Shown here in pieces: positions 18,171 through 30,415 of a stretch of DNA of 64,000 nt (position 1 is the first letter of the stretch; every line of letters begins with the position of its first letter). The notes below the pieces were generated by a model. It had not been told where the DNA came from. It searched no databases and saw only the letters and a program-made list of their open reading frames with translations. A program made the position numbers and the translations under genes. Where the stretch lies: IMG/VR virus record IMGVR_UViG_3300028608_000006, positions 167,789 to 231,788 of that record. One strand, given 5' to 3'.

Positions 18171-18887
18171 TCAGTCCGGATCAGTGAAGGAGTGCAGGTA
18201 GCCCGCAAACAACAGCGAGAGTTCCATGACTGCATCCAGCGAACCAAACCGCCAGTCCACATCAGACAGGCTCACGCTGTAGGACGTCGGGAAGTTTTCC
18301 TCGATGAACTTGTCGTGAGCTTTGCCGATCAGGTCGGGGATGTTTTCCAGGAACAGGTAGTCACCGTTTTCAACGGATTCCACGGTAGTGGTCAAGTCGA
18401 CCCACTTCTTTGGACCCGAAGCCAACAGCTGAGCTTTGATCTCGTACACACCCCAGTTAACGAAGTTGATGTAACGAGACACCTGAGCCTTAACAACGTT
18501 GAGCATCCGGGCCGTGTCAGGACAGTCCAGAGGGCGTGCGTTGATGTTGTCCAGGATCACCTGCACTTCGCTTTGGATGTAAACACCCATCCCGTTGAAG
18601 TACTGACGAGTCTTGTCCGTGCTGATGGAATCGCTGATGCGCTTGTCCAGCCCCATGTTGAGGATGATCTGACCATTCTCCTTAGGGAACGTGCTGTACA
18701 TGCGAACCTTCAGGTCGTTCGCTTCACGGGTTGGCCAGAAGCGGTTGATGATCTCGTTGGCTTCCTTCAGGCTGACACCCTCACGAAGTTGTTCCGCCAA
18801 GGTCTTCAACGCATCAGTATGCGCAACCATCTCTTCGCGTGCCGCATTACGGAACTCGACAAGACGATCGTAGGTAACGTCGGTCAT
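18171..18887 (-). CDS. Head-cluster hypothetical/structural protein
   Basis: 238 aa; 4-nt overlap with the upstream gene. Confidence 0.55.
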   Translation of the reverse strand: MTDVTYDRLVEFRNAAREEMVAHTDALKTLAEQLREGVSLKEANEIINRFWPTREANDLKVRMYSTFPKENGQIILNMGLDKRISDSISTDKTRQYFNGMGVYIQSEVQVILDNINARPLDCPDTARMLNVVKAQVSRYINFVNWGVYEIKAQLLASGPKKWVDLTTTVESVENGDYLFLENIPDLIGKAHDKFIEENFPTSYSVSLSDVDWRFGSLDAVMELSLLFAGYLHSFTDPD

Positions 18888-20413
18888 ACCAATTTCCCCC
18901 AGCCAGTTTGTTTGGCGAAGTTGTTGAACGAGGTTTTCACGCCGGCCAAGTCTTGGACGATGATCTCGTTCACGACCTTGCTGTTGCGTTCGTAGAAGGT
19001 CTTCGCGTCTGCGTCCTTAATAACGACCAAATCGGCCTCATAAGGGTAACCTTCCACATCGGCCGACGGACTATGGCCTTTGCTGCGCGCGTCTTGGTTG
19101 ATCTTGGCGATGGTGTCCATATCGTCAAGCAAGGCGTGGTAGTAGTAGGCGTGCGCACGGTTGTACCAGTCAACCAAGTTCGACGCCTGACGTTCTACCA
19201 GCATCAACGAGTTCGACACGCTGAAGCAGAACTGGGTGTAGCTCCGCACGTTGACACACAGTTGCTGATAAGCCGCCAGCAGGTGTGGTTGATTGTAGTA
19301 CCCAGCGATCTGCTCGATCTTGTCCGCTTCACCGCGTTCGACGATATCACCCAGTTTCCGGAAGTCGGTCTTCTGGATGTCAACGGTGTTCTCGGTGATC
19401 TCAATGTAACGCGCATTGAGGAACTGGATCTGATTGAGCAACAGCGGAACGTCCTGCTTCTGGATCTTGACGCTTTCAGTCACCAGAGTTTCCTGGATCT
19501 TCTTGCGGCATTCGCTGAAACCGTTCTGAAGCTCTTCGTTGCTGAACTTCAGGCTGTACAGAACTTCGTACAGCTTGGAGACCTGGTCCGAGATCGCATC
19601 GACGTTGAGGGCGGTGGATACTTCCAAGATCTCTTTGAGCAGGCGGTTGATTTCAGGTGAAGTTTCTGCCGTCCGTCCCAGCGAAGGGGTGCTTGCCCGA
19701 ACACGAGTCTTGGTGTACTCCTTACCGATGCTAGTCCGCAGCGCTTGGTTAGCACGGGTAATCTTGTCAGCGGACTGGTTCAGCTTAACCATGGCTTGTT
19801 GCAGCAACGGCATGGCTTCAACCAACGAGTCGATCGTACCCTGATCGGTTTCGAACTTGCTCTTCATCAGAGTCAGTTGAGCAACCCGATCCTGGTTAGG
19901 CGGCAGGTTCATCAGGAAGTTCTCGACGTTGTAGTCGGCTGCCGGGAAACCCAGACCGCTCAGCGTCGTAACGAATTCCTGTTTCATCTTGCCCAGGTTG
20001 TCGTTGATTTCCTTGTTGATGCGTGCGCTCTTACGGAAACCGAAGATACCCTTAACCGTATCCACCACCCAGTTCACCGCCATGCGGATATACTTGATGA
20101 TGTTCTCGATGAACTTCTTGAAACCTTCCACGATGGCGCCGAAGAAACCCTCAGCACCAACCCGGGCATTGCGCTCAGACGGGAACGGGTCGTAATGCTC
20201 GTGACCCACCAGTTTGAAGTGGGCGGCGACGCGCTTGGAGAACTTACCCAGTTGCAACGACTCGGCACCAGTAACCATCATGGTGGCTTCGTCTTGCTGG
20301 GTTTCCTTCCACATCTCGGTCAGATCAACACGTTGTTTCTCGGTTCCAGGCTCGTACGAATCGTCCGGGTGACCGCTGGCGACTTGTTTGTACGCGTCCA
20401 GGAATTCATTCAT
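18884..20413 (-). CDS. Processed head protein with gp93-type helix
   Basis: GAE/S and GAE/GFFGAIVEGFKKFIENIIKYI; long coiled coil. Confidence 0.65.
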   Translation of the reverse strand: MNEFLDAYKQVASGHPDDSYEPGTEKQRVDLTEMWKETQQDEATMMVTGAESLQLGKFSKRVAAHFKLVGHEHYDPFPSERNARVGAEGFFGAIVEGFKKFIENIIKYIRMAVNWVVDTVKGIFGFRKSARINKEINDNLGKMKQEFVTTLSGLGFPAADYNVENFLMNLPPNQDRVAQLTLMKSKFETDQGTIDSLVEAMPLLQQAMVKLNQSADKITRANQALRTSIGKEYTKTRVRASTPSLGRTAETSPEINRLLKEILEVSTALNVDAISDQVSKLYEVLYSLKFSNEELQNGFSECRKKIQETLVTESVKIQKQDVPLLLNQIQFLNARYIEITENTVDIQKTDFRKLGDIVERGEADKIEQIAGYYNQPHLLAAYQQLCVNVRSYTQFCFSVSNSLMLVERQASNLVDWYNRAHAYYYHALLDDMDTIAKINQDARSKGHSPSADVEGYPYEADLVVIKDADAKTFYERNSKVVNEIIVQDLAGVKTSFNNFAKQTGWGKLV

Positions 20414-20819
20414 GGCCGTTATCCAGCTCGGACATCAGGTAGTCCACCAGCACGCGGAACTGCTCGCACTGAGTGATGTCAACGCCTTCGGTGCCTTCAA
20501 CCACCACAACCACGGTGAAAGGCTCAGGCAGCTTACCTTGCAGGATCAGGGAAGCGCGCAGGCGGTTCATGCGGTCTTTAACGGTGGCGTGGACAAACGA
20601 ACCGTTGATTGGGGAGATCTTGTTCCAGCGATCCAGTTGAGCCCAGACGCGCTCTTCTTCGTTTTCGCTCAGACCGATGCTGCACGAGGATTTGAAGTGG
20701 CTGCGGATGATCGCAGTGGCGTAGGCTTCCAGCGCGAACTTGGCGCACTGCTCAGGGCAAGTGATACCCAGCTCTACCAGTTTGGCTTTGTAGTCGAGTA
20801 CGTGAGGCAAATGGGACAT
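20406..20819 (-). CDS. Small hypothetical protein
   Basis: Start revised to ATG at 20819 (SD AGGAG); 137 aa. Confidence 0.55.
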   Translation of the reverse strand: MSHLPHVLDYKAKLVELGITCPEQCAKFALEAYATAIIRSHFKSSCSIGLSENEEERVWAQLDRWNKISPINGSFVHATVKDRMNRLRASLILQGKLPEPFTVVVVVEGTEGVDITQCEQFRVLVDYLMSELDNGHE

Positions 20820-20858
20820 GGTAATGCTCCTGTTCATTAAGGGTGGCAAACTGGTGGA

Positions 20859-22289
20859 TTAGAACTCGAAGGTTTTGTTTTCTTCTCGTTCCTGGATGTT
20901 GTCTGGATCACGGCGGGCTTTCAACGCAGCCAACTTGTGAGAGAAGTTGTTAATCTCGTGGTTGGCAAGAACTTGGGTGTAGTGCTCGATCTCTTGCAGC
21001 TTGAAATCACCGCCATTGAAGACCCAACCCATGGCACGCTTGATAACAGTATCTTCGTACCACGGTTTGAATTTCTTACTCAGCTCGAGCATTTTGTCGA
21101 CAGACTTAACCAGTTCGGCTTTATCAGTCGGGCTAACGTTCTTGTCTTCACGGATCTTGGCGATCATCTGACGCAATGCATCTTCGAAACGACGGTGGTC
21201 GGCGTTGTACACACCCGAGTAACCACGACCGAAGTAAGCACAAACAAACGACACAGTGAACACTGCGCCGCTGAAAACGATGAACGGCACCAAGGTGGTG
21301 CTCGCCGCAACGAACAGCGTGATTGGTGTCAGCAAGATCAGCTCGAGGATGATCGTGGTCAGGGCTGCGGTGATCAGACTGTTGATCACGATGGTGATAG
21401 CACCGACATCAGCAAAGGCGGAGATAGCAGCGATGATGCCTTTATCACAACCCATACGAAGGGCGTACATGTCAGCAATTACTTCTGACGACATCTGTTC
21501 AACACCCACGGACAAACTACGACGGCTGTTACGCTGTACGGTCAACTTGTTCCAGTAGAGGACGAACGCCTCATCGGTAGGGTTCTGTGCAATGGCTTGC
21601 AGTTCAGCGATCTTGGCTGGATCGAGTTCGAGGATCGACGCAGCATCCTTGAGAACCACCACACGGTCTTCTTCACGCTCAGCCTTGCGGTAGTGCATCA
21701 GTGCGGCCTTGGCAACCAGGTTGTCCGAAGCAGCGGTGTAGATCATCATGCAACCACCGAACACATGTCCGAGTTCGTGAGCAACAGCACCCGCCATGAT
21801 GCCGTGGATAGGAACGCCGTACTTGGCGATCTTGGCTGGTTCAAACGTATCGTTCAGGTTGACGTTGATGTACAAGTTAACTGGAACCGATTTGAAGCTA
21901 CCGCCGACCTTACCAGTCTTGTAGTCAATAGTCCCCTTGAACATCTTGACCTTGTTCTCGGCAAACCAACGGTACAGGGTGGTCTTGGTGATACCCATCA
22001 ACTGGTCTACACCGTCGTTGTTGAGAACGTGATGCGGCGAAAAGTAACCGGTGTCAACCGCGAGGTTGCCTTTCTTTTCGTAGTTGATGTTGATGTTGTT
22101 GAAGCCAGTGAACTCTTCGATGATCGGGAGGATCTCGTCACCGATGTTTTCGCTCAGGACAGCCTTACCGGACTCCGTCGAGATATTTCTCTCGAAGGCA
22201 GCACTCAGGACGTCGTAGAACCGGGTGGATTGGAAGTCAATGAATTCATTACCAGCACGGTCGGATTTAAGAAAATCAATAGAGATCAT
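20859..22289 (-). CDS. Head-cluster protein with M48/HtpX-like zinc metalloprotease motifs and a membrane segment
   Basis: Start revised to ATG at 22289 (SD AAAGGAG). HELGH at 21765-21779, EVIAD at 21471-21485, then a long hydrophobic stretch. N-terminal AGNE site. Confidence 0.6.
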   Translation of the reverse strand: MISIDFLKSDRAGNEFIDFQSTRFYDVLSAAFERNISTESGKAVLSENIGDEILPIIEEFTGFNNININYEKKGNLAVDTGYFSPHHVLNNDGVDQLMGITKTTLYRWFAENKVKMFKGTIDYKTGKVGGSFKSVPVNLYINVNLNDTFEPAKIAKYGVPIHGIMAGAVAHELGHVFGGCMMIYTAASDNLVAKAALMHYRKAEREEDRVVVLKDAASILELDPAKIAELQAIAQNPTDEAFVLYWNKLTVQRNSRRSLSVGVEQMSSEVIADMYALRMGCDKGIIAAISAFADVGAITIVINSLITAALTTIILELILLTPITLFVAASTTLVPFIVFSGAVFTVSFVCAYFGRGYSGVYNADHRRFEDALRQMIAKIREDKNVSPTDKAELVKSVDKMLELSKKFKPWYEDTVIKRAMGWVFNGGDFKLQEIEHYTQVLANHEINNFSHKLAALKARRDPDNIQEREENKTFEF

Positions 22290-22320
22290 GCGCGGACGCT
22301 CCTTTAAGTTATACACAGAC

Positions 22321-22334
22321 CCTATTAATATAGT
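22321..22334 (-). promoter_or_regulatory. Possible early-type promoter
   Basis: Minus strand reads ACTATATTAATAGG, similar to the other four copies of the motif. Confidence 0.3.
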
Positions 22335-22366
22335 GTCAAAAGCAGGCATAAAATGCAGGGTACTCC

Positions 22367-24148
22367 ATGGAACCAAATAGCTCCCCCATAATTGCCAAAG
22401 TGTGCAAACATGCCGCTCAGTCGATTAATCGTTTTGACAAGAACAAAGATTTGCTGTGCGCCAAGATCACCAATATTCATGAAGATGGTTCACGTTCGAA
22501 TTCCCTGATCTCGCTGGAGAACTACAAGCAGCCGATCTGGATCGTTAAAGAAGACAAACGCAAGTTCAAGCAGCACAAAGATTACATCGAAGAGTCCATG
22601 TGCAAAGAGTACAAGGTACCTCGGTGTTCGTTGGCAGCTGCGGTCAACAAGTATTACTACGGGCGCTCTGACAGCTCGTATGACCTTCGTCAGGCAAAGA
22701 ACAACCCTCACGTATTCGGATTGGATCAAACCCCTCCAGTTCACTTCAAGCGACGCTTCTTCGAGAAGTACGGCGACTATCAAGAAACCGAGTCTTACAC
22801 CTTAGCGGCTTATGACGTTGAGGGCGACATGTTCAAGAAGGGCGTGCCGATCATGATGGCCTCGGTGACCTTCAAGACCAAAGCGTACTTCGCGGCATGT
22901 CGTGGCTGGTATTCCGAGAAGGCCGGCAAACATCTCGAAGACCACGAGATCATCAAGAACTTGAAGGAAGCTGAGTACAAGTACCTCAGTGACCACGTCA
23001 AGCGTCGTAACTGCACGATCGAGTATGAGTTGTTCGATACTCCGGGGCAGGTGGTTAATGCGTGTATTCAGAAGATGCACGAATGGGAACCGGACTGGGT
23101 AGCTGCTTGGAACGCGGCTTACGACATGGAGGCTAACGAGAAAGCTTTGTTGGCCGACGGCTATGACTTGGCTCAGGTGTATTCTGATCCTCGCATTCCT
23201 CGTGAGTACAAGTCCTACAAGTATCACCCGGGTCGTACGCACAAGCATAAAGAAGATGGCACGAAGATGCCGTTGGAATGGCAAGAGCGTTTCCCAACCA
23301 TTCGCACCATGGCCACCTTTCAGTTTGCGGATGCGGGTTCGTTCTACGCGATCAAGCGCCAACCAGTTGAAGGTAAGCTCCAGGACACCTCTCTGCAAGG
23401 CATTGCGACCAAAGAGGAAGTACCGGGTAAGTTGTACACCGTAGAGGGCGCAGAGCACGGCGTAGGCTCTCCTCAGTGGCATCGTTACATGCAGCAGTAT
23501 CACCCGTACCTGTACTCCATGTACAACATCTGCGACAACTTCGTTATTGAAGAGATTAACGAGAAGACCAGTGACTTCAGTCTCTCGTTGCCGATGTTGT
23601 TGAAATACTCGGAATACTTCAACTACGTGTCTCAGCCAAGCATGATCTCGGACACCCTGTCCTTCATGGCGCGTGAGCGTGGTTACGTATGGGGTTCAAC
23701 TCCAAGCAACCGGGATAAACAGTTCTCTGAGAAGTTGCCGACTCTGGGTGATTGGATTGCGTTGCTCGATACTGAGAAGAACGCTTCCTTCGGTAAGTTA
23801 CTCTTTGCCGGGCTGGAGGACGTCTACAGTAACGGTCGTACGGATACTTCTGACATCGACGTGGAAGGTGCTTACCCAACAGCAACCCTTGCGCTCAATG
23901 CCGGTGGTAAAACGACCATGGCGGAGGTCTACGGTATTCAAGGGGCTGACCCTATGAAGTTCCGAGAGATCGCGGTTAACTACGCCAGCAGTACACAGGC
24001 TAACGCATTCGGGTTGTGTCATGACCTGTTCCGTTTCCCTGCTCCTCGTGATCTGAAGAAGATCTTCGAAGAAGCGTTGATCGCACAAGGTAAAGAAGCT
24101 GAACTGAAGAAACTGCAAGAAAATGAAGCAATGAAAAGAGCCGCCTAG
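22367..24148 (+). CDS. Split family-B DNA polymerase, exonuclease plus motif A half (phiKZ gp82-like)
   Basis: ExoI YDVEGD, ExoII WNAAYD, ExoIII YNICD; motif A DIDVEGAYP near the C-terminus; no DTDS. Confidence 0.85.
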   Translation: MEPNSSPIIAKVCKHAAQSINRFDKNKDLLCAKITNIHEDGSRSNSLISLENYKQPIWIVKEDKRKFKQHKDYIEESMCKEYKVPRCSLAAAVNKYYYGRSDSSYDLRQAKNNPHVFGLDQTPPVHFKRRFFEKYGDYQETESYTLAAYDVEGDMFKKGVPIMMASVTFKTKAYFAACRGWYSEKAGKHLEDHEIIKNLKEAEYKYLSDHVKRRNCTIEYELFDTPGQVVNACIQKMHEWEPDWVAAWNAAYDMEANEKALLADGYDLAQVYSDPRIPREYKSYKYHPGRTHKHKEDGTKMPLEWQERFPTIRTMATFQFADAGSFYAIKRQPVEGKLQDTSLQGIATKEEVPGKLYTVEGAEHGVGSPQWHRYMQQYHPYLYSMYNICDNFVIEEINEKTSDFSLSLPMLLKYSEYFNYVSQPSMISDTLSFMARERGYVWGSTPSNRDKQFSEKLPTLGDWIALLDTEKNASFGKLLFAGLEDVYSNGRTDTSDIDVEGAYPTATLALNAGGKTTMAEVYGIQGADPMKFREIAVNYASSTQANAFGLCHDLFRFPAPRDLKKIFEEALIAQGKEAELKKLQENEAMKRAA

Positions 24149-24208: not shown

Positions 24209-25276
24209 TTACTTAAGGCCGAAGATACGACGCACGGTGTCGCACAGGCTTTGGATGGTCAGGCAAGTGGTGTGGACGTAGCTGACGGTGCTGTTGATCG
24301 CAATCATCATGTCCTTCGCCACAGCCAGCTCGGCACGGGCGCCGGCTTTACGTTCAGCATGCTTATCCGACCAGCTCAAAGCCTTTTCGCACTCGGTGAT
24401 ACGATGCTCCAGGTTGTGCTTGTTGGCTTTGATGAAACCGTTAATGCTGTCGATGGTTTTCATCTGATGCTGAAGCACTTCGAGCACACGAGCACCCTGA
24501 CCCATATCGCTCACGATCATTGCGCCGTCGATGTGGTTGATGGCGGAACGGATGGCCGAGATATCATTGTTGTAGATCTCGGTGATCAGGTGCTTGTAGA
24601 AGTTGTAGCTTTCATTCGCACCCACATGGATTTCCACATCAGTGTGGAGCTTGGTAATGTGAGCAACCAAGCCGGCACCTTTCTCTTTCACGAGCTTAAG
24701 GCCAGTTTGCAACTTCTTTTGCTGCTTGTGGTTAAGCTTGGCGAACTTCTCGGCGACCTTCTTGGTTTCAGCAGGAGAAGGAGCCGGGGTGGCTTGGATG
24801 ACCTGGATGAGTTCCTGGACTTCCTTAACTTCGGCAGGGGTGGTCACTGGATCAGCAACAACCTTCTGCATGCTTTCCACCAGCTTGTGTTGAACGGCTT
24901 TCGTGTCCCCCGATGGCTTTTCGAGCGCAACCTTCGCCACAGTCAGCGCTTCTTTGGTGTTATCGATCTCAGCCTGAGCACCACCTTCCTTCTTACCGAA
25001 GAAGAAACCCCAGATAGACTTGAACAACTTCTGGACGTATTCCCAGACAGCTTTAAGGCCATCGCCGATAGAACCGAAGAAGCTTTCGTTACCATCAACC
25101 TTCTGCTGACGGGTCAGGCTGTCGTTTGCACCCAACACCGCGTAGGTGTATTCCTGAGCACGGGTCAAGCCAAAGCCTTCGCTACCAGTAACGCCACCCA
25201 TGGTGTCGTCCATTGCAACAAAGATGGTTTCCAGGTGGTCGTTATCAATCTGACCGTAATCTTCGCTAGCTTCCAT
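24209..25276 (-). CDS. Head cargo protein, paralog B
   Basis: GSE/GFGLT...DGNE/SFFGSIGDGLKAVWEYVQKLFKSIWGFFF. Confidence 0.65.
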   Translation of the reverse strand: MEASEDYGQIDNDHLETIFVAMDDTMGGVTGSEGFGLTRAQEYTYAVLGANDSLTRQQKVDGNESFFGSIGDGLKAVWEYVQKLFKSIWGFFFGKKEGGAQAEIDNTKEALTVAKVALEKPSGDTKAVQHKLVESMQKVVADPVTTPAEVKEVQELIQVIQATPAPSPAETKKVAEKFAKLNHKQQKKLQTGLKLVKEKGAGLVAHITKLHTDVEIHVGANESYNFYKHLITEIYNNDISAIRSAINHIDGAMIVSDMGQGARVLEVLQHQMKTIDSINGFIKANKHNLEHRITECEKALSWSDKHAERKAGARAELAVAKDMMIAINSTVSYVHTTCLTIQSLCDTVRRIFGLK

Positions 25277-25358: not shown

Positions 25359-26432
25359 TTACAGGCCGAAGACCTTATTGGTGCGGTGTTGCAGATCAAC
25401 CTGGACGGAGATCGTCTTCTTCATCGACTGCGCAATGGCGGTGGTGAAGGAGAGAATGCCGCGCAGCATGCCCAGCTCGGTGTTCTTGTGCTTGGCAACC
25501 CAGTCGCCCTTGTCGTCCTTGTCGGTCTTGGCCAGGAACGCTTGGCATTCCTTGATCTTCGTGCTGACCTGAGGAGCGTGTTTGGAGAAGCTGGCGGCCA
25601 GGGTTTTAACGCCGTTCAGGTTGTCGATGATCAGCTTGGCCAGTACAGCGGCGTCAGACTGGGACTTGACTTCTTCGCGGTTTTTCAGCGCGGTGATGAC
25701 GGCCTGTTCTTTCGGCACGATGGACTTGGCTTCGCCAACGATGTCCTTGGCCAGGTCTTCGGTGAGTTCGAACTTGCCGCCTTCGTCGCCTTCAGCTTTC
25801 TCGACTACGCCGATGTACTTGCCTTTGGCGTCGATCACGGCCATGGCCGCCAGCTTGAAGCGGTTCTGGGCGTCTTTGTTGACTTTCGGCAACTCATTCG
25901 CCATCTCTTTCACGAGTGCTTTCTTCTCGGTGAGATCCAGGCCGGCTTCTTTCAATCGACCGATGAAAGCGTTCTTGTCGGATTCGGCAGCAGCCGCGAT
26001 CGATGCTTTGCGCATCTTGTCGAACTGGTCTTCGATCTGCTTGTCGTTACCGGTGCCAACCGCCGCTACTTCAGCAGCCAGTTCCTTGACTTCGGCAACA
26101 GCCGCGTCAACTTCTTTGCCCACGTCGCGCTTGAAGAAGAACTCCCAGACCGACTTGAACATCTTGACGATGTAGTCGTAGGTAGCCTTCAAGCCGCCGC
26201 CAACAGCGCTGAAGAAGCTTTCGTTGCCGTCGATGGAGCTGGCGCGCAGAGTACCGCTGGCCATCAGAACGCCTTCAGCATAACGCTGGGCTTCAGTCAG
26301 ACCGAAACCTTCAGCGCCGGTCACGCCGCCGATAGTGTCGTCCATGGCGTCGAACATGATTTCGACATGAGGGATATCCGGGATCGACGAAACTTCGTTT
26401 TCTTCACCGGGTACAAGAGCAAGAGGATCCAT
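25359..26432 (-). CDS. Head cargo protein, paralog A
   Basis: GAE/GFGLT...DGNE/SFFSAVGGGLKATYDYIVKMFKSVWEFFF; strong codon bias. Confidence 0.65.
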   Translation of the reverse strand: MDPLALVPGEENEVSSIPDIPHVEIMFDAMDDTIGGVTGAEGFGLTEAQRYAEGVLMASGTLRASSIDGNESFFSAVGGGLKATYDYIVKMFKSVWEFFFKRDVGKEVDAAVAEVKELAAEVAAVGTGNDKQIEDQFDKMRKASIAAAAESDKNAFIGRLKEAGLDLTEKKALVKEMANELPKVNKDAQNRFKLAAMAVIDAKGKYIGVVEKAEGDEGGKFELTEDLAKDIVGEAKSIVPKEQAVITALKNREEVKSQSDAAVLAKLIIDNLNGVKTLAASFSKHAPQVSTKIKECQAFLAKTDKDDKGDWVAKHKNTELGMLRGILSFTTAIAQSMKKTISVQVDLQHRTNKVFGL

Positions 26433-27224: not shown

Positions 27225-27743
27225 TTACGGTTTGCTGATATTAAGCTTTTTAGCCAACGCCAACAGTTCTCGGTCTTCTTTAGAAAGCCCGTCCGTTGGT
27301 GGTGCCGCAGCGGCATCAGCCTTAGCCCGCTGCTCATCCCCTTTGGTAATCCCCTTAACTAAACTCTCCACTAAGAAAGCTGGCAGGTTAAGGTAATCAT
27401 TGAGTGGGATGATGTCTTTCAATTTACCCCAACCGTATTGATGACCAATAGCGTCAATCGACCACGGGTGGTAGTACTCATTCTCCTTTTCAATGAATGC
27501 AACAGAGGAATGAGGCTTCAGGGTAGAACGGTCGTAATACCCCATGTTGAAGTCGTGCAGTATGCCTTCCTGAAAGTCCAGCTTCTCTCGACTGGTGTCT
27601 TTGAGATTCAGTCCAAACAGGTTAGCTACTACTGCACGATACTCATCGCTGAACTCTCTCTCGAACTCTATTCGGAGATGGCTTCTTTGGTGGCGGCTGC
27701 CGCTTCTGCCGCTTGAGTCATCAGCTTCAACTGGGTGAGGGTA
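27225..27743 (-). CDS. -1-frame ORF, probably the C-terminal extension of a frameshift product (tail chaperone T-like part)
   Basis: Frame open from 27788 to the stop at 27225. No ATG/GTG/TTG before 27545, and that ATG has no well-spaced SD. It is the -1 frame relative to the upstream gene. Confidence 0.6.
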   Translation of the reverse strand, partial: YPHPVEADDSSGRSGSRHQRSHLRIEFEREFSDEYRAVVANLFGLNLKDTSREKLDFQEGILHDFNMGYYDRSTLKPHSSVAFIEKENEYYHPWSIDAIGHQYGWGKLKDIIPLNDYLNLPAFLVESLVKGITKGDEQRAKADAAAAPPTDGLSKEDRELLALAKKLNISKP

Positions 27744-29392
27744 AAAAAAGCCATGAATGGGTCGATAGGGGTGTAACCATAACGACGTTCAGGATCCTGG
27801 AACTCTTCGGTACGACGCTTGCACGCCGGGCAGTGGTAGTTAGCCACAGCGACGAAGGTGCGAGCCATCATAGGCGATTTGTTCAGGATGAAGGCAGAGA
27901 GTTTCTTGTTCAGCTCTTTGCTGTCCAGGATAACTTCCATGCAACCCTTGTTGAACTCGGACGCATCACATTCCGAACGCTTCAACACCACGTCTTCGTC
28001 ATCGCTACCAGGAGCGGCCACGGACACGAAGGATTGGATCCAGTGCAGGAACTCGGTCGAGCCCAGAGTGGTCAGCAACAGACCCACTTGAGTTTGGAAC
28101 TCGGCTTCGTTAACCACCTGCCCACGGATTTCCTGGAGCTGTGGATTGATACGACCGGCGTAGTAGTCGAAGGTTTCGAAAGCTTCGGCCAGCGACGCAG
28201 GACCCACGGTGAAGTAGATCGACTTGTCGGCGTTGTAGACGCGGTTGCTGTCCAGACCGTAAGTGGTCTTTTCGATCATGGCCAGCGTCTCTTCGATGCT
28301 GTACTTGATCTTGGAGTTGAAGATGTTGGCGTAGATAGCCGCTTCTTCATCGGTTTCGATGGAGTGACGAACACGAACCAACTTGTCCGGGTCTGCCACT
28401 TCGAACGCCGACCAGTCGCACATCTCGTTCAGACAACGCAGCTGGAGGTTCACACCATTGCTGTGGGTGGAGCGCAGCAGTGCCATGCAGATCGTACCGA
28501 AGTCACTGAAACGGATAACCCGTACCAGGTCCTTGAAGTCGACAATGCCAGTCACCGAACTGTTGACGATACGAGCCGCCAAGAAGTCCCAGACCACACG
28601 CATGCCAGCGATCACCGACAGACTCACAGTGTTACCGCCTACGGTGCGAACGTAGCCTTTAACAGTGCGGTTGATGTCGTTGACCAGACCAGCCAATTCC
28701 AGCTTGCTTGGACGGGTGAAAGTCAGCGAGCAGAACGAATCACGCAACAGCACGTCGAACTGGAACTCACCGTCTTCCGCACGCATCGCCGAGCGACGCA
28801 TTACTTCCGATACGCTGAAGCCCTTAGTGGCACGACCCGGCTTCTTGCCCAGGATGTCACCGGTGACGATGTCGCTGCCACGATCGCTGACGTTGGAGAT
28901 GCCGTCTTCGTTCATGACCTTGGAACGGATCTTGATGCTGTCGACATGCTCTTCCATGAAACGGTAGAGGTCGGCGCACAGTCTGTTCATTTCTTCACGA
29001 GTTTTGCTCGGGAAGTTGGCTTCGATGTACTGAGCCCAGTCAGCATTAGTAGAAGCAACCATGCCCTCAGTTGCTTCACCGCGTTCGTGCAACGACTGCA
29101 TCGCCGTCACAGACAGCCACTTCGAAAGCAGGGTGTTAGCCTTTTCGTTGTTGGCGCGGGAGTTGCCCAGGAAGATCGGCAGGTAACCGAGTTCACGATC
29201 TTCTTCAGTACCGCTACGGGTAACTTCAGACACCGAAGGCAGGACTTTCTTCATCGGGGTGTTTTCAGCGGTATGCACATCGGCATACGCAGCTTCGGCT
29301 ACCGGAGGAGATGCAACAGCACCACCTACGTTATTGACCGCACCGCCCACATTGTTGACTTCACCAACTGGGCCAGTTTCAGATTCACTCAT
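27668..29392 (-). CDS. Putative tail/baseplate assembly chaperone (G-like; T4 gp26-like features)
   Basis: 574 aa from ATG at 29392; C-terminal CPAC knuckle followed by IDPFMAFF; function inferred. Confidence 0.5.
   Translation of the reverse strand: MSESETGPVGEVNNVGGAVNNVGGAVASPPVAEAAYADVHTAENTPMKKVLPSVSEVTRSGTEEDRELGYLPIFLGNSRANNEKANTLLSKWLSVTAMQSLHERGEATEGMVASTNADWAQYIEANFPSKTREEMNRLCADLYRFMEEHVDSIKIRSKVMNEDGISNVSDRGSDIVTGDILGKKPGRATKGFSVSEVMRRSAMRAEDGEFQFDVLLRDSFCSLTFTRPSKLELAGLVNDINRTVKGYVRTVGGNTVSLSVIAGMRVVWDFLAARIVNSSVTGIVDFKDLVRVIRFSDFGTICMALLRSTHSNGVNLQLRCLNEMCDWSAFEVADPDKLVRVRHSIETDEEAAIYANIFNSKIKYSIEETLAMIEKTTYGLDSNRVYNADKSIYFTVGPASLAEAFETFDYYAGRINPQLQEIRGQVVNEAEFQTQVGLLLTTLGSTEFLHWIQSFVSVAAPGSDDEDVVLKRSECDASEFNKGCMEVILDSKELNKKLSAFILNKSPMMARTFVAVANYHCPACKRRTEEFQDPERRYGYTPIDPFMAFFTLTQLKLMTQAAEAAAATKEAISE
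27743..27749 (-). promoter_or_regulatory. -1 frameshift slippery heptamer T-TTT-TTT
   Basis: Codons GCT TTT TTT ACC fit X-XXY-YYZ in the correct phase, 24 codons before the stop. Confidence 0.65.
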
Positions 29393-29419
29393 GTTCAACG
29401 TTTCCTTGAAGCGTGGAAG

Positions 29420-30373
29420 TTAAGCAACAGGTTGTTCGATAACGTCGCCGGCCTGGAGCTGGGCGATGGATTCGCGCAGGCGTTCGGCATTCGCATCGGT
29501 GGACAGAAGATGTTCAGTGTCATCGCCCACGACATCTTTCTCGACATCAGGAGCTTCGAGCAGAACCGCGTCAGCGACATCAGCGTCGATCACAGGGTCG
29601 GAAGGCATTGGGTTTTCCGGGGTGTAGCTGTGCAGCACGTCAGCCGCGTCGCCTTCAGCGGAAACCTGGGTGTGGTACAGGGGGAAAACCTTTTCCATAC
29701 GCTCGCAGTGCAGGGTGCGCATGTATTCGAAGATCGGGGTGGTTTCCTTGTTGTGGTGCTCGTCAGCGTAACCGTCGATTTCCGGCTTACGTGGGGTGAG
29801 CATCAACATGATGTCCGGGATGGTACCGTCAAACAGACGCGCCAGCATCTCGGTGTAGTGCATGAAGATGTCCATGTAATCTTCAGGCTCTTTCTTGCCA
29901 TCGACGAATGCCACGATTGCGTTGATGTCTTCAGTCACCTTGGTGATCTGTTCATCGCAACGGTTGATCAGCGCTTGTTCTTCAGGAGTGATCTCGAAGC
30001 GCTTCTCGTCAGCCAGACGGCAGAACACTTCAACGCCGGAGTGCACACGGATGATCGCAGGGATCACGTCGTTGATGTTCTGCATGACGATGACGTTGGT
30101 CAGCTTGTCTTCCATACTGGTGGCTTCGTCGAACTGAGCCTTGGTCATCTTGCCCTGACGAACCTTCTTCTTCAGCTGCTTCAGACGACGATTGGCCTGA
30201 TCGGCAATGCTTTCGTCGGTGGCCTGTTCGGAGTACAGCTTGGCCATTTCACGGCGACCAATGATCTTCTTGCTGAACGCCTCTTCTTTACGGGCGTGTA
30301 CTTGCTTTTGCTTAGCGCGCTTCTGACGTTTGGCTTGTTTGTTTGCGCGCAGCGAAGTTTGTTTGGTAGCCAT
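29420..30373 (-). CDS. Hypothetical protein with basic N-terminus and acidic C-terminus
   Basis: 317 aa; KQAKRQKRAKQKQ at the N-terminus. Confidence 0.6.
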   Translation of the reverse strand: MATKQTSLRANKQAKRQKRAKQKQVHARKEEAFSKKIIGRREMAKLYSEQATDESIADQANRRLKQLKKKVRQGKMTKAQFDEATSMEDKLTNVIVMQNINDVIPAIIRVHSGVEVFCRLADEKRFEITPEEQALINRCDEQITKVTEDINAIVAFVDGKKEPEDYMDIFMHYTEMLARLFDGTIPDIMLMLTPRKPEIDGYADEHHNKETTPIFEYMRTLHCERMEKVFPLYHTQVSAEGDAADVLHSYTPENPMPSDPVIDADVADAVLLEAPDVEKDVVGDDTEHLLSTDANAERLRESIAQLQAGDVIEQPVA

Positions 30374-30415
30374 ATGCTATGTTCCTTTTAATTAACAGCC
30401 AATGGTAAAGCCCCA

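What the first reader, a model, noticed from the sequence alone, without database searches (positions are those of the whole stretch)
20859..22289. M48/HtpX-like membrane zinc protease encoded in the head cluster, possibly injected
Seen: AHELGH, a downstream SEVIADMYA...G, then about 55 hydrophobic residues, plus an N-terminal AGNE site like the other head cargo. Known: HExxH followed by E-x-x-A-D is the M48 gluzincin signature. Inferred: a virion-packaged, maturation-processed protease delivered to the host inner membrane, which could help form the early infection vesicle or cut membrane defence sensors. I know of no characterised activity for this family.
Basis: partly seen in the sequence, partly recalled or inferred. 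Interest (0 to 1): 0.75.

Follow-up and report, generated by a model that had tools for sequence, protein, structure and literature searches.

The report
Capsid-packaged M48-like zinc protease
This jumbo-phage gene encodes a head-packaged zinc protease, distantly related to HtpX and Ste24 and carrying a greasy helical hairpin; every nucleus-forming jumbo phage has it, and nobody has tested what it does.

Summary
Window 20859..22289 (-) is a real 476-aa gene with HELGH (171-175), E269-VIAD, a hydrophobic helical hairpin (about 283-355) and an N-terminal G-N-E15 site.

It belongs to a large jumbo-phage family: PHROG 2767, EL gp52, phiKZ gp84, SPN3US gp45, Chimalliviridae core gene cg22. Across 135 representatives at 15-56% identity, H171, E172, H175 and E269 are invariant. 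A third M48 motif, [Y/H]-D-x-P-x-x-R, is also conserved.

Profile searches align the first two motifs residue for residue with ZMPSTE24/Ste24p. Of 135 members, 43 touch Pfam Peptidase_M48. A pLDDT-95 model of the catalytic domain finds ZMPSTE24, Ste24p, BepA and minigluzincins first.

Published mass spectrometry shows SPN3US gp45 is a head protein cut by the prohead protease at ASE-20, the site that aligns with E15 here.

So "virion-packaged, maturation-processed M48-like protease" is supported. It is not an HtpX or Ste24 orthologue: the topology differs, and the hairpin is an insertion between motifs 2 and 3 that is only borderline transmembrane.

Ejection into the host and action at the inner membrane or early-infection vesicle remain inference. 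No characterised activity was found in the literature searched.

The parts
20859..22289 (-). CDS, 476 aa plus stop: Chimalliviridae cg22 / phiKZ gp84 / SPN3US gp45 / EL gp52 family, an M48-like zinc metallopeptidase of the phage head
   Evidence: (PHROG 2767, E 3e-84)
22299..22304 (-). Ribosome-binding site AAGGAG, 9 nt upstream of the ATG
22245..22289 (-). Predicted 15-residue N-terminal propeptide (MISIDFLKSDRAGNE), ending in the prohead-protease motif G13-N14-E15. Comparable in length to a T4 capsid-targeting sequence.
   Evidence: P3 is G/A/S in 120/135 and P1 is E in 133/135. It aligns with the MS-verified ASE-20 cleavage of SPN3US gp45.
21402..22244 (-). Catalytic domain, residues 16-296: an alpha/beta N-subdomain plus the active-site helices of the gluzincin/M48 fold
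   Evidence: AF2 domain model pLDDT 95.1. VIA-align top hits are ZMPSTE24 Z 7.7, Ste24p Z 6.9, BepA Z 6.2, abylysin and selecase. PF01435 is hit by 43/135 members.
21765..21779 (-). HELGH (H171, E172, H175): two zinc ligands and the catalytic base
   Evidence: Invariant in 135/135. Aligned to ZMPSTE24 H335-E336-x-x-H339.
21471..21485 (-). E269-V-I-A-D: third zinc ligand in the M48 ExxAD motif
   Evidence: E 135/135, A 122/135, D 134/135. Aligned to E415 of ZMPSTE24. Same motif as HtpX E222 and BepA E201.
21225..21443 (-). Hydrophobic helical hairpin (residues 283-355; helices 297-320 and 333-355 around an L-T-P turn), inserted between M48 motifs 2 and 3
   Evidence: A hydrophobic stretch is present in 131/135 members. 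It is borderline transmembrane here and weaker in phiKZ and SPN3US.
21189..21209 (-). Y361-N-A-D-H-R-R367: family motif [Y/H]-D-x-P-x-x-R, the counterpart of the M48 C-terminal (S/T)-H-P-x-x-x-x-R motif
   Evidence: Y 128/135, H 7/135, R 134/135. HtpX has THPPLDKR at 276-282 and BepA has THPLPESR at 246-252.
20862..21188 (-). C-terminal helical bundle (residues 368-476); no specific fold match
20406..20849 (-). Next gene in the same operon: phiKZ gp85 / EL gp53 homologue (inner vertex-binding complex protein). Its start codon is uncertain.
   Evidence: PHROG 14520, E 2e-31; synteny; role from PMC11297242
18884..20413 (-). Next gene: phiKZ gp86 / EL gp54 homologue (inner vertex-binding complex protein). 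Overlaps its neighbours by 8 and 4 nt.
   Evidence: PHROG 14541, E 7e-125
22367..24148 (+). Divergently transcribed DNA polymerase gene, the conserved left-hand neighbour of this family
   Evidence: PHROG 3011, E 9e-183; the same arrangement is seen in EL, AH04 and SPN3US

Best explanation
The gene encodes a divergent M48-type zinc endopeptidase that is built into the phage head. SHOWN here: (1) It is the orthologue of EL gp52, phiKZ gp84, SPN3US gp45 and Chimalliviridae core gene cg22, and it sits in the conserved operon with the inner vertex-complex proteins. (2) It carries all three M48 sequence blocks under absolute or near-absolute conservation: HExxH, ExxAD and [Y/H]-D-x-P-x-x-R. Its catalytic domain models confidently on the gluzincin/M48 core, so it is almost certainly an active enzyme and not a relic. 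(3) It has a conserved (G/A/S)-x-E site 15 residues from the N-terminus. SHOWN in relatives by others: the protein is in purified heads, and the prohead protease removes the short N-terminal propeptide at exactly this site. INFERRED: the short propeptide acts as a T4-type capsid-targeting signal and may also keep the enzyme quiet until it is inside the prohead. The moderately hydrophobic hairpin, spliced in beside the active site between motifs 2 and 3, is kept shielded in the capsid. When the head contents are ejected with the DNA, the hairpin dips into the host inner membrane or the membrane of the early-infection vesicle. That would place the catalytic cleft at the membrane surface, as in HtpX and Ste24, where it cuts host or co-injected phage proteins. 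I put about 0.85 on 'head-packaged, processed, catalytically competent M48-like peptidase', and about 0.4 on the ejection and membrane step. The overall figure is for the whole chain.
For: Family and synteny. Invariant H171/E172/H175/E269 and near-invariant A272, D273, R278, G280, Y361, R367. Profile against PDB: ZMPSTE24 E 8e-4 and Ste24p E 1.3e-3, with HExxH and the ligand Glu aligned. PF01435 is hit by 43/135 members, best E 5.2e-7; SPN3US gp45 scores 17.7 bits. Models: pLDDT 87.8 for the whole protein and 95.1 for the domain. Fold matches: ZMPSTE24, Ste24p, BepA and minigluzincins are the top specific hits; HtpX and OMA1 appear among Swiss-Prot hits; an AFDB cluster representative named 'Peptidase M48 domain' matches at E 4.5e-11, TM 0.66/0.72. 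Third motif compared with E. coli HtpX and BepA. Head location and cleavage: phiKZ gp84 'structural head protein'; SPN3US gp45 'Head, unknown function', ASE-20 cleavage seen in every MS run, and a propeptide length compared by the authors to the T4 CTS (PMC10052503 and PMC5694885). Aligned sites. Importance: PHIKZ084 has no transposon insertions over 1242 bp in the per-gene insertion table that matches the text's essentiality calls (Supplement 2 of PMC12676376). Hairpin.
Against: No family member has been shown to be ejected, to bind zinc or to cleave anything. This protein itself does not reach any Pfam M48 score. Foldseek E-values against PDB and Swiss-Prot are poor, at 0.4 or worse. VIA Z-scores of 6-8 are in the range where unrelated matches occur. 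I could not read model coordinates, so convergence of the three ligands was not measured; the zinc co-folding job was not run by the tool. The hairpin is sub-threshold for membrane insertion in phiKZ gp84, SPN3US gp45 and 47/135 members, so it may not be a membrane element at all. EL gp52, the nearest cultured relative, is not annotated as a virion protein. The lack of Tn insertions in PHIKZ084 may be a polar effect, as the authors found for orf85-86.
Confidence: 0.45

Rival explanations
1. Late-acting assembly factor. The hairpin anchors the newly made protein in the producer cell's inner membrane, where chimallivirus procapsids assemble. The protein helps nucleate the prohead or release it from the membrane, possibly using its protease. 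It ends up in the head as a passenger with no role in the next infection.
For: Procapsids of these phages assemble on the bacterial inner membrane (review PMC12908238). The gene is co-operonic and translationally coupled with the vertex-complex proteins. Charged residues flank both sides of the hairpin and its turn is uncharged, which fits insertion from the cytoplasmic side.
Against: The mature virion protein keeps the hairpin: SPN3US gp45 is 48.2 of 50.3 kDa after cleavage. It would therefore have to be pulled out of the membrane. The hairpin is too weak to count as a transmembrane segment in many members. No membrane-extracted head protein is known in tailed phages (my own knowledge).
Confidence: 0.2
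2. Intracapsid clean-up peptidase. After activation by the prohead protease, it degrades propeptide and scaffold fragments inside the maturing head so that they can leave. The hydrophobic hairpin is an oligomerisation or shell-binding element, not a membrane element.
For: These heads undergo unusually extensive proteolysis, with long propeptides cut into several pieces (PMC10052503). The protein is inside the head at that time. The hairpin is sub-threshold for membrane insertion in many members.
Against: All mapped cleavages in SPN3US follow the single A-x-E rule of the prohead protease, and recombinant gp245 alone fragments gp53. No cleavages were reported that need a second enzyme. The characterised M48 relatives that match here act on membrane or envelope proteins (their substrates are from my own knowledge). 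A conserved hairpin next to the active site is left unexplained.
Confidence: 0.15
3. Purely structural minor head protein that descends from a protease but no longer cuts anything.
For: It is annotated only as a 'virion structural protein' in most genomes. Tyr replaces the usual His of the third M48 motif in 95% of members.
Against: H, E, H and E are each 135/135 in a family whose mean column identity is 20%. That pattern is not expected without selection on catalysis. Tyr is a competent transition-state stabiliser in other zincins (my own knowledge). The protein is not seen in the ordered capsid density of phiKZ or Goslar, although its operon partners are.
Confidence: 0.05

Closest known systems
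SPN3US gp45 / phiKZ gp84 / EL gp52 / Goslar gp067 / RAY gp286 (Chimalliviridae core gene cg22; PHROG 2767)
   Same: Same family over the full length: EL 48-49% identity, SPN3US 20%, phiKZ 15%, with all motifs aligned. Same operon position next to the gp85/gp86 homologues and the DNA polymerase. Same N-terminal (G/A/S)-x-E site, which is experimentally cleaved in SPN3US. Head location is shown in SPN3US and annotated for phiKZ.
   Different: This copy, like EL's, has a longer and more hydrophobic hairpin of about 70 residues, against about 24 in phiKZ and 36 in SPN3US. It also has a 20-residue C-terminal extension. None of the family has an assigned function: 'Head, unknown function'.
Peptidase family M48: ZMPSTE24/Ste24p (M48A), HtpX, BepA, OMA1
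   Same: HExxH, the third-ligand Glu in ExxAD, and a C-terminal [H/Y]-x5-R block, in the same order. The catalytic core fold matches. The profile-to-sequence alignment puts H171, H175 and E269 on ZMPSTE24 H335, H339 and E415.
   Different: There are no N-terminal transmembrane helices, so it has neither the HtpX layout nor the seven-helix chamber of Ste24. There is no TPR domain or signal peptide as in BepA. A hydrophobic hairpin is inserted between motifs 2 and 3: 92 residues here, median 82 in the family, against 45-54 in BepA and HtpX. Tyr replaces His in motif 3. It has extra N-terminal and C-terminal domains and a capsid-maturation propeptide. It falls below Pfam's threshold.
Minigluzincins (selecase, abylysin/proabylysin, jannalysin)
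   Same: A minimal soluble gluzincin core that structurally resembles M48/M56 catalytic domains. They match the domain model at Z 5.5-6.2, and selecase shares 21% identity over 99 aligned residues.
   Different: They are about 100-residue archaeal stand-alone proteins with no hairpin and no virion context.
T4 capsid-targeting-sequence proteins (Alt, IPI-III)
   Same: A short N-terminal propeptide is removed by the prohead protease and the mature protein is retained in the head. The SPN3US authors make this comparison for gp45.
   Different: There is no sequence relationship. Injection is established for the T4 proteins (my own knowledge) but not for this family.
Bacillus phage AR9 'zincin protease' proteins and metagenomic Myoviridae 'Peptidase M48' / 'beta-barrel assembly-enhancing protease' entries
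   Same: Predicted structures match the whole model at Foldseek E 7e-4 to 5e-3, probability 1.00. This shows that the family, and its protease-like annotation, reach beyond the chimallin-encoding phages.
   Different: The similarity is very distant, TM 0.3-0.4. These are annotation labels only, with no experiments.

Membership tests
Peptidase family M48 (MEROPS M48; Pfam PF01435) | HExxH zinc-binding and catalytic motif | tested here: met
   HELGH at 171-175. H, E and H are 135/135 in the family. Aligned to ZMPSTE24 residues 335-339.
Peptidase family M48 (MEROPS M48; Pfam PF01435) | Third zinc ligand Glu within an ExxAD motif on a downstream helix | tested here: met
   E269-VIAD. E is 135/135 and D is 134/135. 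Aligned to ZMPSTE24 E415 and to the Ste24p ExxAD motif. The same motif occurs in E. coli HtpX at E222 and BepA at E201.
Peptidase family M48 (MEROPS M48; Pfam PF01435) | C-terminal (S/T)-H-P-x-x-x-x-R block | tested here: inconclusive
   The family has [Y/H]-D-x-P-x-x-R with identical spacing: Y 128, H 7 and R 134 of 135. SPN3US reads YDPPQER against HtpX HPPLDKR. His is replaced by Tyr in most members, the block is displaced by the hairpin insertion, and no profile alignment covered it.
Peptidase family M48 (MEROPS M48; Pfam PF01435) | Score above Pfam's gathering threshold (20.3 bits) | tested here: not met
   This protein has no PF01435 hit even at E 10. SPN3US gp45 scores 17.7 bits. At family level, 43/135 members hit at E < 0.1, best 5.2e-7. 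The link is therefore transitive, not direct.
Peptidase family M48 (MEROPS M48; Pfam PF01435) | Gluzincin/M48 catalytic-core fold | tested here: met
   The domain model (pLDDT 95) has ZMPSTE24 (Z 7.7, 156 residues), Ste24p (Z 6.9) and BepA (Z 6.2, rmsd 2.8 over 102 residues) as its best matches. The Z-scores are modest, and Foldseek E-values are not significant.
Peptidase family M48 (MEROPS M48; Pfam PF01435) | The three ligands converge on one zinc site; zinc-dependent proteolysis | not testable with these tools
   Model coordinates are not readable here, and the zinc co-folding job was not folded. No biochemistry exists.
HtpX / Ste24 type integral-membrane M48 proteases | Transmembrane helices N-terminal to HExxH (two in HtpX, six in Ste24), with the active site formed at the ends of membrane helices | tested here: not met
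   There is no hydrophobic segment before residue 283. The only hydrophobic element is a hairpin after the third ligand. It is borderline here (dG about -0.3 to +1.0 kcal/mol) and absent by that measure in 47/135 members.
Chimalliviridae core gene cg22 (phiKZ gp84 family, PHROG 2767) | Full-length sequence homology | tested here: met
   PHROG 2767 at E 3.4e-84 over residues 8-456. tblastn to EL gives 48.5% identity over 96% of the query. There are 267 cluster representatives. phiKZ gp84 aligns with all motifs.
Chimalliviridae core gene cg22 (phiKZ gp84 family, PHROG 2767) | Conserved gene order: DNA polymerase, then this gene, then the gp85-like and gp86-like genes | tested here: met
   Window, EL, AerS_266 (upstream gene annotated ribonuclease), AH04, phiKZ and SPN3US.
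Prohead-protease substrates with short capsid-targeting-type propeptides | An N-terminal (S/A/G)-x-E cleavage motif within about 25 residues of the start | tested here: met
   G13-N14-E15. Conserved in 120/135 (P3) and 133/135 (P1). The homologous site ASE-20 is cleaved in SPN3US.
Prohead-protease substrates with short capsid-targeting-type propeptides | Actual cleavage, packaging and ejection of this protein | not testable with these tools
   The window comes from an uncultured IMG/VR record. Virion MS and imaging are needed.

The most novel reading that the evidence does not exclude
A zinc protease carried inside the capsid is fired into the new host with the DNA. It plants its hairpin in the inner membrane, or in the membrane of the early-infection (EPI) vesicle. 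There it cuts specific host envelope proteins or co-injected phage proteins, making it a phage-encoded factor needed to build, mature or open the vesicle, or to disarm membrane-bound defence sensors. It would be the first enzyme assigned to that step, and an M48 protease used as a viral injected effector against bacteria.
Probability: 0.2. Interest if true: 0.85.

Novelty: new variant of a known kind. Interest (0 to 1): 0.55.

Why it matters
Nucleus-forming jumbo phages inject their DNA into a membrane vesicle. The papers I read here name no phage protein that shapes or opens it. This family is one of the few core head proteins with a recognisable enzymatic domain and a membrane-type element. 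It is present in every chimallivirus examined, and in phiKZ it tolerated no transposon insertions. That makes it a concrete, testable candidate for early-infection membrane biology, or alternatively for the equally unexplained assembly of procapsids on the inner membrane. It also gives a function-level annotation to a gene labelled 'hypothetical' or 'virion structural protein' in most of the roughly 300 jumbo-phage genome records that matched it. Finally, it defines a divergent M48 branch that the current Pfam model mostly misses.

Tried and rejected
- Single-sequence Pfam, NCBIfam and PDB phmmer searches on the protein gave nothing useful. The top PDB hits were Candida aspartic proteinase (E 0.008) and MakB (E 0.26), which I treat as noise.
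- Foldseek of the whole model and the domain model against PDB gave no hit better than E 0.4. 14-3-3, ABC transporters and chaperonins led the lists and were rejected as generic helical matches.
- VIA-align on the whole model was dominated by the helical hairpin matching long helices in ABC transporters and coiled coils. Only the isolated catalytic domain was informative.
- PF01435 searched in six frames over the phage's own 231,788-bp record gave no match, consistent with the divergence.
I re-ran it without that row.
- Literature: the phiKZ head-proteolysis paper (PMC3323674) is not held. Searches for M48, HtpX or metalloprotease together with jumbo phage or Chimalliviridae found nothing relevant. 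'gp84' and 'gp084' searches found no functional study. The EPI-vesicle papers do not mention the family.
- SprT-like (17/135 members, best E 0.002) and other zincin Pfam hits were rejected as the primary assignment. They cover only the HExxH helix, and the invariant downstream Glu in ExxAD fits the M48-type gluzincin signature.
Full report
**1. The observation**

Window 20859..22289 on the minus strand is an open frame of 476 codons plus a stop. It has an AAGGAG ribosome-binding site 9 nt before the ATG. The mechanically longest ORF starts at a TTG at 22376, but that start overlaps the divergent DNA polymerase gene. Homologues align from the ATG, so the ATG is the start.

HELGH lies at residues 171-175, SSEVIADMYALRMG at 267-280, and DRAGNE at 10-15. 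A hydrophobic block spans 283-354. The compound pattern HExxH followed 50-120 residues later by ExxAD in an open frame occurs once in all six frames of the 64-kb window.

**2. What family it is**

The protein matches PHROG 2767 ('unknown function') at E 3e-84 over its full length. tblastn finds it in 73 phage records. All listed hits are jumbo phages of 203-277 kb, and the best cultured relative is Pseudomonas phage EL gp52 at 48.5% identity. An exhaustive search finds 267 cluster representatives, nearly all 420-470 aa long.

The window itself is the last 64 kb of a 231,788-bp IMG/VR virus record, with no near-identical record among cultured phages.

Gene order is conserved in EL, AerS_266, AH04, phiKZ and SPN3US. 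This gene is followed by a roughly 147-aa protein and a 420-570-aa protein. A DNA polymerase gene lies just upstream in four of the five and in the window; in AerS_266 that gene is annotated as a ribonuclease.

In phiKZ the positional and sequence homologue is gp84, annotated as a 'structural head protein'. It has HEIGH and DEQLAD. [quoted passage not shown]

The core-genome table of Prichard et al. lists the family as cg22: gp067 / gp084 (phiKZ) / gp286, 'putative virion structural protein' (PMC10299810 supplement). phiKZ gp84 as query finds 224 further records. These include PhiPA3, 201phi2-1, Goslar, RAY and the SPN3US group, plus Ralstonia, Xanthomonas, Burkholderia and Bacillus phages.

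**3. Is it an M48-type protease?**

The protein alone scores nothing in Pfam. The family-level evidence is consistent:

- **Conservation.** In an alignment of 135 representatives at 15-56% identity to the query, the only invariant residues are G130, H171, E172, G174, H175 and E269. A272, D273, R278, G280, Y361 and R367 are each conserved in more than 90%.
- **Profile against PDB.** A profile of the family searched against all PDB sequences finds human ZMPSTE24 (E 8e-4) and yeast Ste24p (E 1.3e-3) first. The alignment places the family's HExGH on H335-E336-L-G-H339 and its ExxAD Glu on E415 of 'RRFEFQAD'. By my own knowledge these are the zinc ligands of ZMPSTE24.
- **Pfam at family level.** When residues 16-296 of every member are scanned, 43 of 135 hit Peptidase_M48, best E 5.2e-7. 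This is far more than any other family. SPN3US gp45 scores 17.7 bits, just under the 20.3-bit threshold, from HExxH to ExxAD.
- **Third motif.** E. coli HtpX and BepA carry THPPLDKR and THPLPESR 45-54 residues after the ligand Glu. The phage family has [Y/H]-D-x-P-x-x-R with the same spacing: Y 128, H 7 and R 134 of 135. SPN3US reads YDPPQER.
- **Structure.** AlphaFold2 with the family alignment gives pLDDT 87.8 and pTM 0.88 for the whole protein, and pLDDT 95.1 for residues 16-296. A Foldseek-independent search with the domain model ranks ZMPSTE24 (Z 7.7, 156 residues) and Ste24p (Z 6.9) first. BepA follows (Z 6.2, rmsd 2.8 A over 102 residues), then the minigluzincins abylysin, selecase and jannalysin.
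- **Other fold libraries.** HtpX and OMA1 models dominate the meaningful Swiss-Prot hits, at weak E-values. The one strong AFDB-cluster hit (E 4.5e-11, TM 0.66/0.72) is auto-named 'Peptidase M48 domain-containing protein'. BFVD shows the same fold in many jumbo phages and, distantly, in AR9 'zincin protease' entries.

The structural scores are individually modest, and Foldseek against PDB is not significant. I could not measure the ligand geometry, because coordinates are not exposed and the zinc co-fold was not run. The case therefore rests on the convergence of independent lines and not on any single score.

My conclusion is that this is a divergent branch of M48-like gluzincins, very probably catalytically active.

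**4. How it differs from known M48 enzymes**

There is no hydrophobic segment before residue 283. It therefore has neither the HtpX layout nor the Ste24 chamber, and there is no signal peptide or TPR domain as in BepA.

The hydrophobic hairpin is an insertion between motif 2 and motif 3. The Glu-to-Tyr distance is 92 residues here and has a family median of 82, against 45-54 in BepA and HtpX. This places it right beside the active site.

The strength of the hairpin varies. On a translocon free-energy scale (values recalled from Hessa et al. 2005), this protein has segments at -0.3 to +1.0 kcal/mol. phiKZ gp84 and SPN3US gp45 have none below 1.5, and 47 of 135 members have none below 1.0.

That fits a conditional or monotopic membrane element, or a protein-buried one, better than a constitutive transmembrane anchor. 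'HtpX-like membrane protease' is therefore too strong. 'M48-like protease with a hydrophobic hairpin next to the cleft' is what the data show.

**5. Packaging and processing**

Position 13 is G, A or S in 120 of 135 members, and position 15 is Glu in 133 of 135. The next residues follow x-I-x-F-Q.

The SPN3US prohead protease gp245 cuts after A-x-E (PMC10052503). By my recollection the phiKZ enzyme cuts after S/A/G-x-E.

SPN3US gp45 is the family member. Counting annotated genes from the RNA polymerase and DNA polymerase genes makes this 450-aa ORF gene 45, and its predicted mass of 50.3 kDa fits. Table 2 of that paper lists gp45 as 'Head, unknown function', cleaved at ASE-20. The defining semi-tryptic peptide was seen in every virion and purified-head analysis. 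In my alignment ASE|SIGFQ of gp45 sits exactly on GNE|FIDFQ here, GTE|FIEFQ in EL and SNE|VLDVN in phiKZ.

The same group noted that gp45 is the only processed SPN3US head protein whose propeptide is as short as a T4 capsid-targeting sequence (PMC5694885). It has not been shown for this phage. EL gp52 is not flagged as a virion protein in its record.

**6. Importance**

In the phiKZ transposon screen, PHIKZ084 has zero insertions over 1242 bp. That figure is from the per-gene table (Supplement 2) that agrees with the text's essentiality calls: gp87 also has zero insertions there, as the text states. The authors did not discuss orf84. They showed that the equally insertion-free orf85-86 can be deleted, so a polar or indirect effect cannot be excluded. 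The protein is detected in infected-cell proteomics.

**7. Mechanism**

*Shown.* It is a conserved head protein with an intact M48-type active site, a hairpin inserted next to that site, and a short propeptide removed by the prohead protease.

*Inferred (best guess, about 0.4 for this step).* By analogy with T4 CTS-bearing proteins (per my own knowledge, all ejected) and with hydrophobic ejection proteins of other phages, the enzyme leaves the head with the DNA. It then inserts its hairpin into the nearest bilayer and works at the membrane surface. For these phages that bilayer is the inner membrane or the EPI vesicle. Cleavage at E15 may double as zymogen activation, because the new N-terminus (x-I-x-F-Q) is conserved and confidently modelled against the domain.

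*Rivals.*
- A late role anchoring or releasing procapsids at the inner membrane, where they are known to assemble.
- An intracapsid clean-up peptidase.
- A catalytically dead structural protein, which the invariance argues against.

Nothing available here discriminates between the first three readings. The experiments that would do so are listed under next steps.

**8. Novelty**

The catalytic kind is known. The family is known as a core 'virion structural protein'. A few database records already carry protease-like labels:

- 'CAAX prenyl protease' in AerS_266 and 'peptidase' in AH04.
- 'M48 family lipoprotein protease' in Moabite, and 'beta-barrel assembly-enhancing protease' in Proteus phage 7 and AgentSmith.
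- 'Zincin protease' in AR9.

I found no paper that discusses the similarity or any activity.

The architecture has no counterpart among the M48 structures and E. coli M48 proteins compared here. It combines a capsid-targeting propeptide, an M48 core split by a hydrophobic hairpin, Tyr in place of His in motif 3, and a C-terminal helical bundle, all packaged inside a virus head. I therefore class it as a new variant of a known kind, of moderate interest as it stands. Interest would be high if the ejection and membrane hypothesis proves right.

Noticed in passing
window 24209..25276 (-) and 25359..26432 (-): Two tandem paralogous genes of 355 and 357 aa, both PHROG 21850 (unknown function). They share N-terminal motifs GGVTG(S/A)EGFGLT and (V/I)DGNESFF.
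   Followed up: partly
window 18171..22289 (-): The protease gene heads a tightly packed four-gene block: a 9-nt gap to the gp85-like gene, then overlaps of 8 nt and 4 nt with the gp86-like gene and a 238-aa gene that has no PHROG match. This suggests translational coupling of the protease with the inner vertex-complex proteins.
   Followed up: partly
window 22290..22366: A 77-bp divergent intergenic region lies between the protease operon and the DNA polymerase gene. It contains 'ctatattaatagg' on the minus strand, an AT-rich element that may be a phage promoter. It was not compared with known phiKZ or EL promoter consensus sequences.
   Followed up: no
P0001 residues 240-352 (window about 21234..21572): There is weak sequence similarity to the alpha-pore-forming toxin component MakB (PDB 6t8d, E 0.26; 6w1w, E 0.64), and a low-ranked Foldseek match to the SmhB pore (7a0g). 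Both involve the hydrophobic hairpin region. Neither is significant. They are only a lead for a soluble-to-membrane switching hairpin.
   Followed up: no
window 20937..21488 (+), 21597..22307 (+) and many others: Long antisense ORFs of 180-890 aa overlap almost every real gene in this 52% GC window (for example 27713..30391 +, 892 aa). They have no homologues that I looked for and are most likely compositional artefacts.
   Followed up: no
L005:6900-8621 (SPN3US gp47) compared with window 18884..20413: SPN3US gp47 is described in the literature as an essential head protein with a transmembrane helix and a candidate ejection protein. It occupies the position of phiKZ gp86 and the window's 509-aa gene, which in phiKZ and Goslar is an ordered vertex-complex protein. 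Whether these are true homologues with different fates was not examined.
   Followed up: no
BFVD hits A0A172JHV9 and A0A172JI27 (Bacillus phage AR9): AR9 carries two 'zincin protease' proteins whose models match this fold. The family, possibly duplicated, therefore extends to the PBS1/AR9 group of giant Bacillus phages outside the chimallin-encoding core set.
   Followed up: no
whole window / G000: The window is bases 167789-231788 of a 231,788-bp IMG/VR record rated 100% complete by CheckV. For this protein the nearest cultured phage is EL at about 48% identity, while metagenomic relatives reach 92%. The phage therefore appears to represent an uncultured EL-like lineage.
   Followed up: partly
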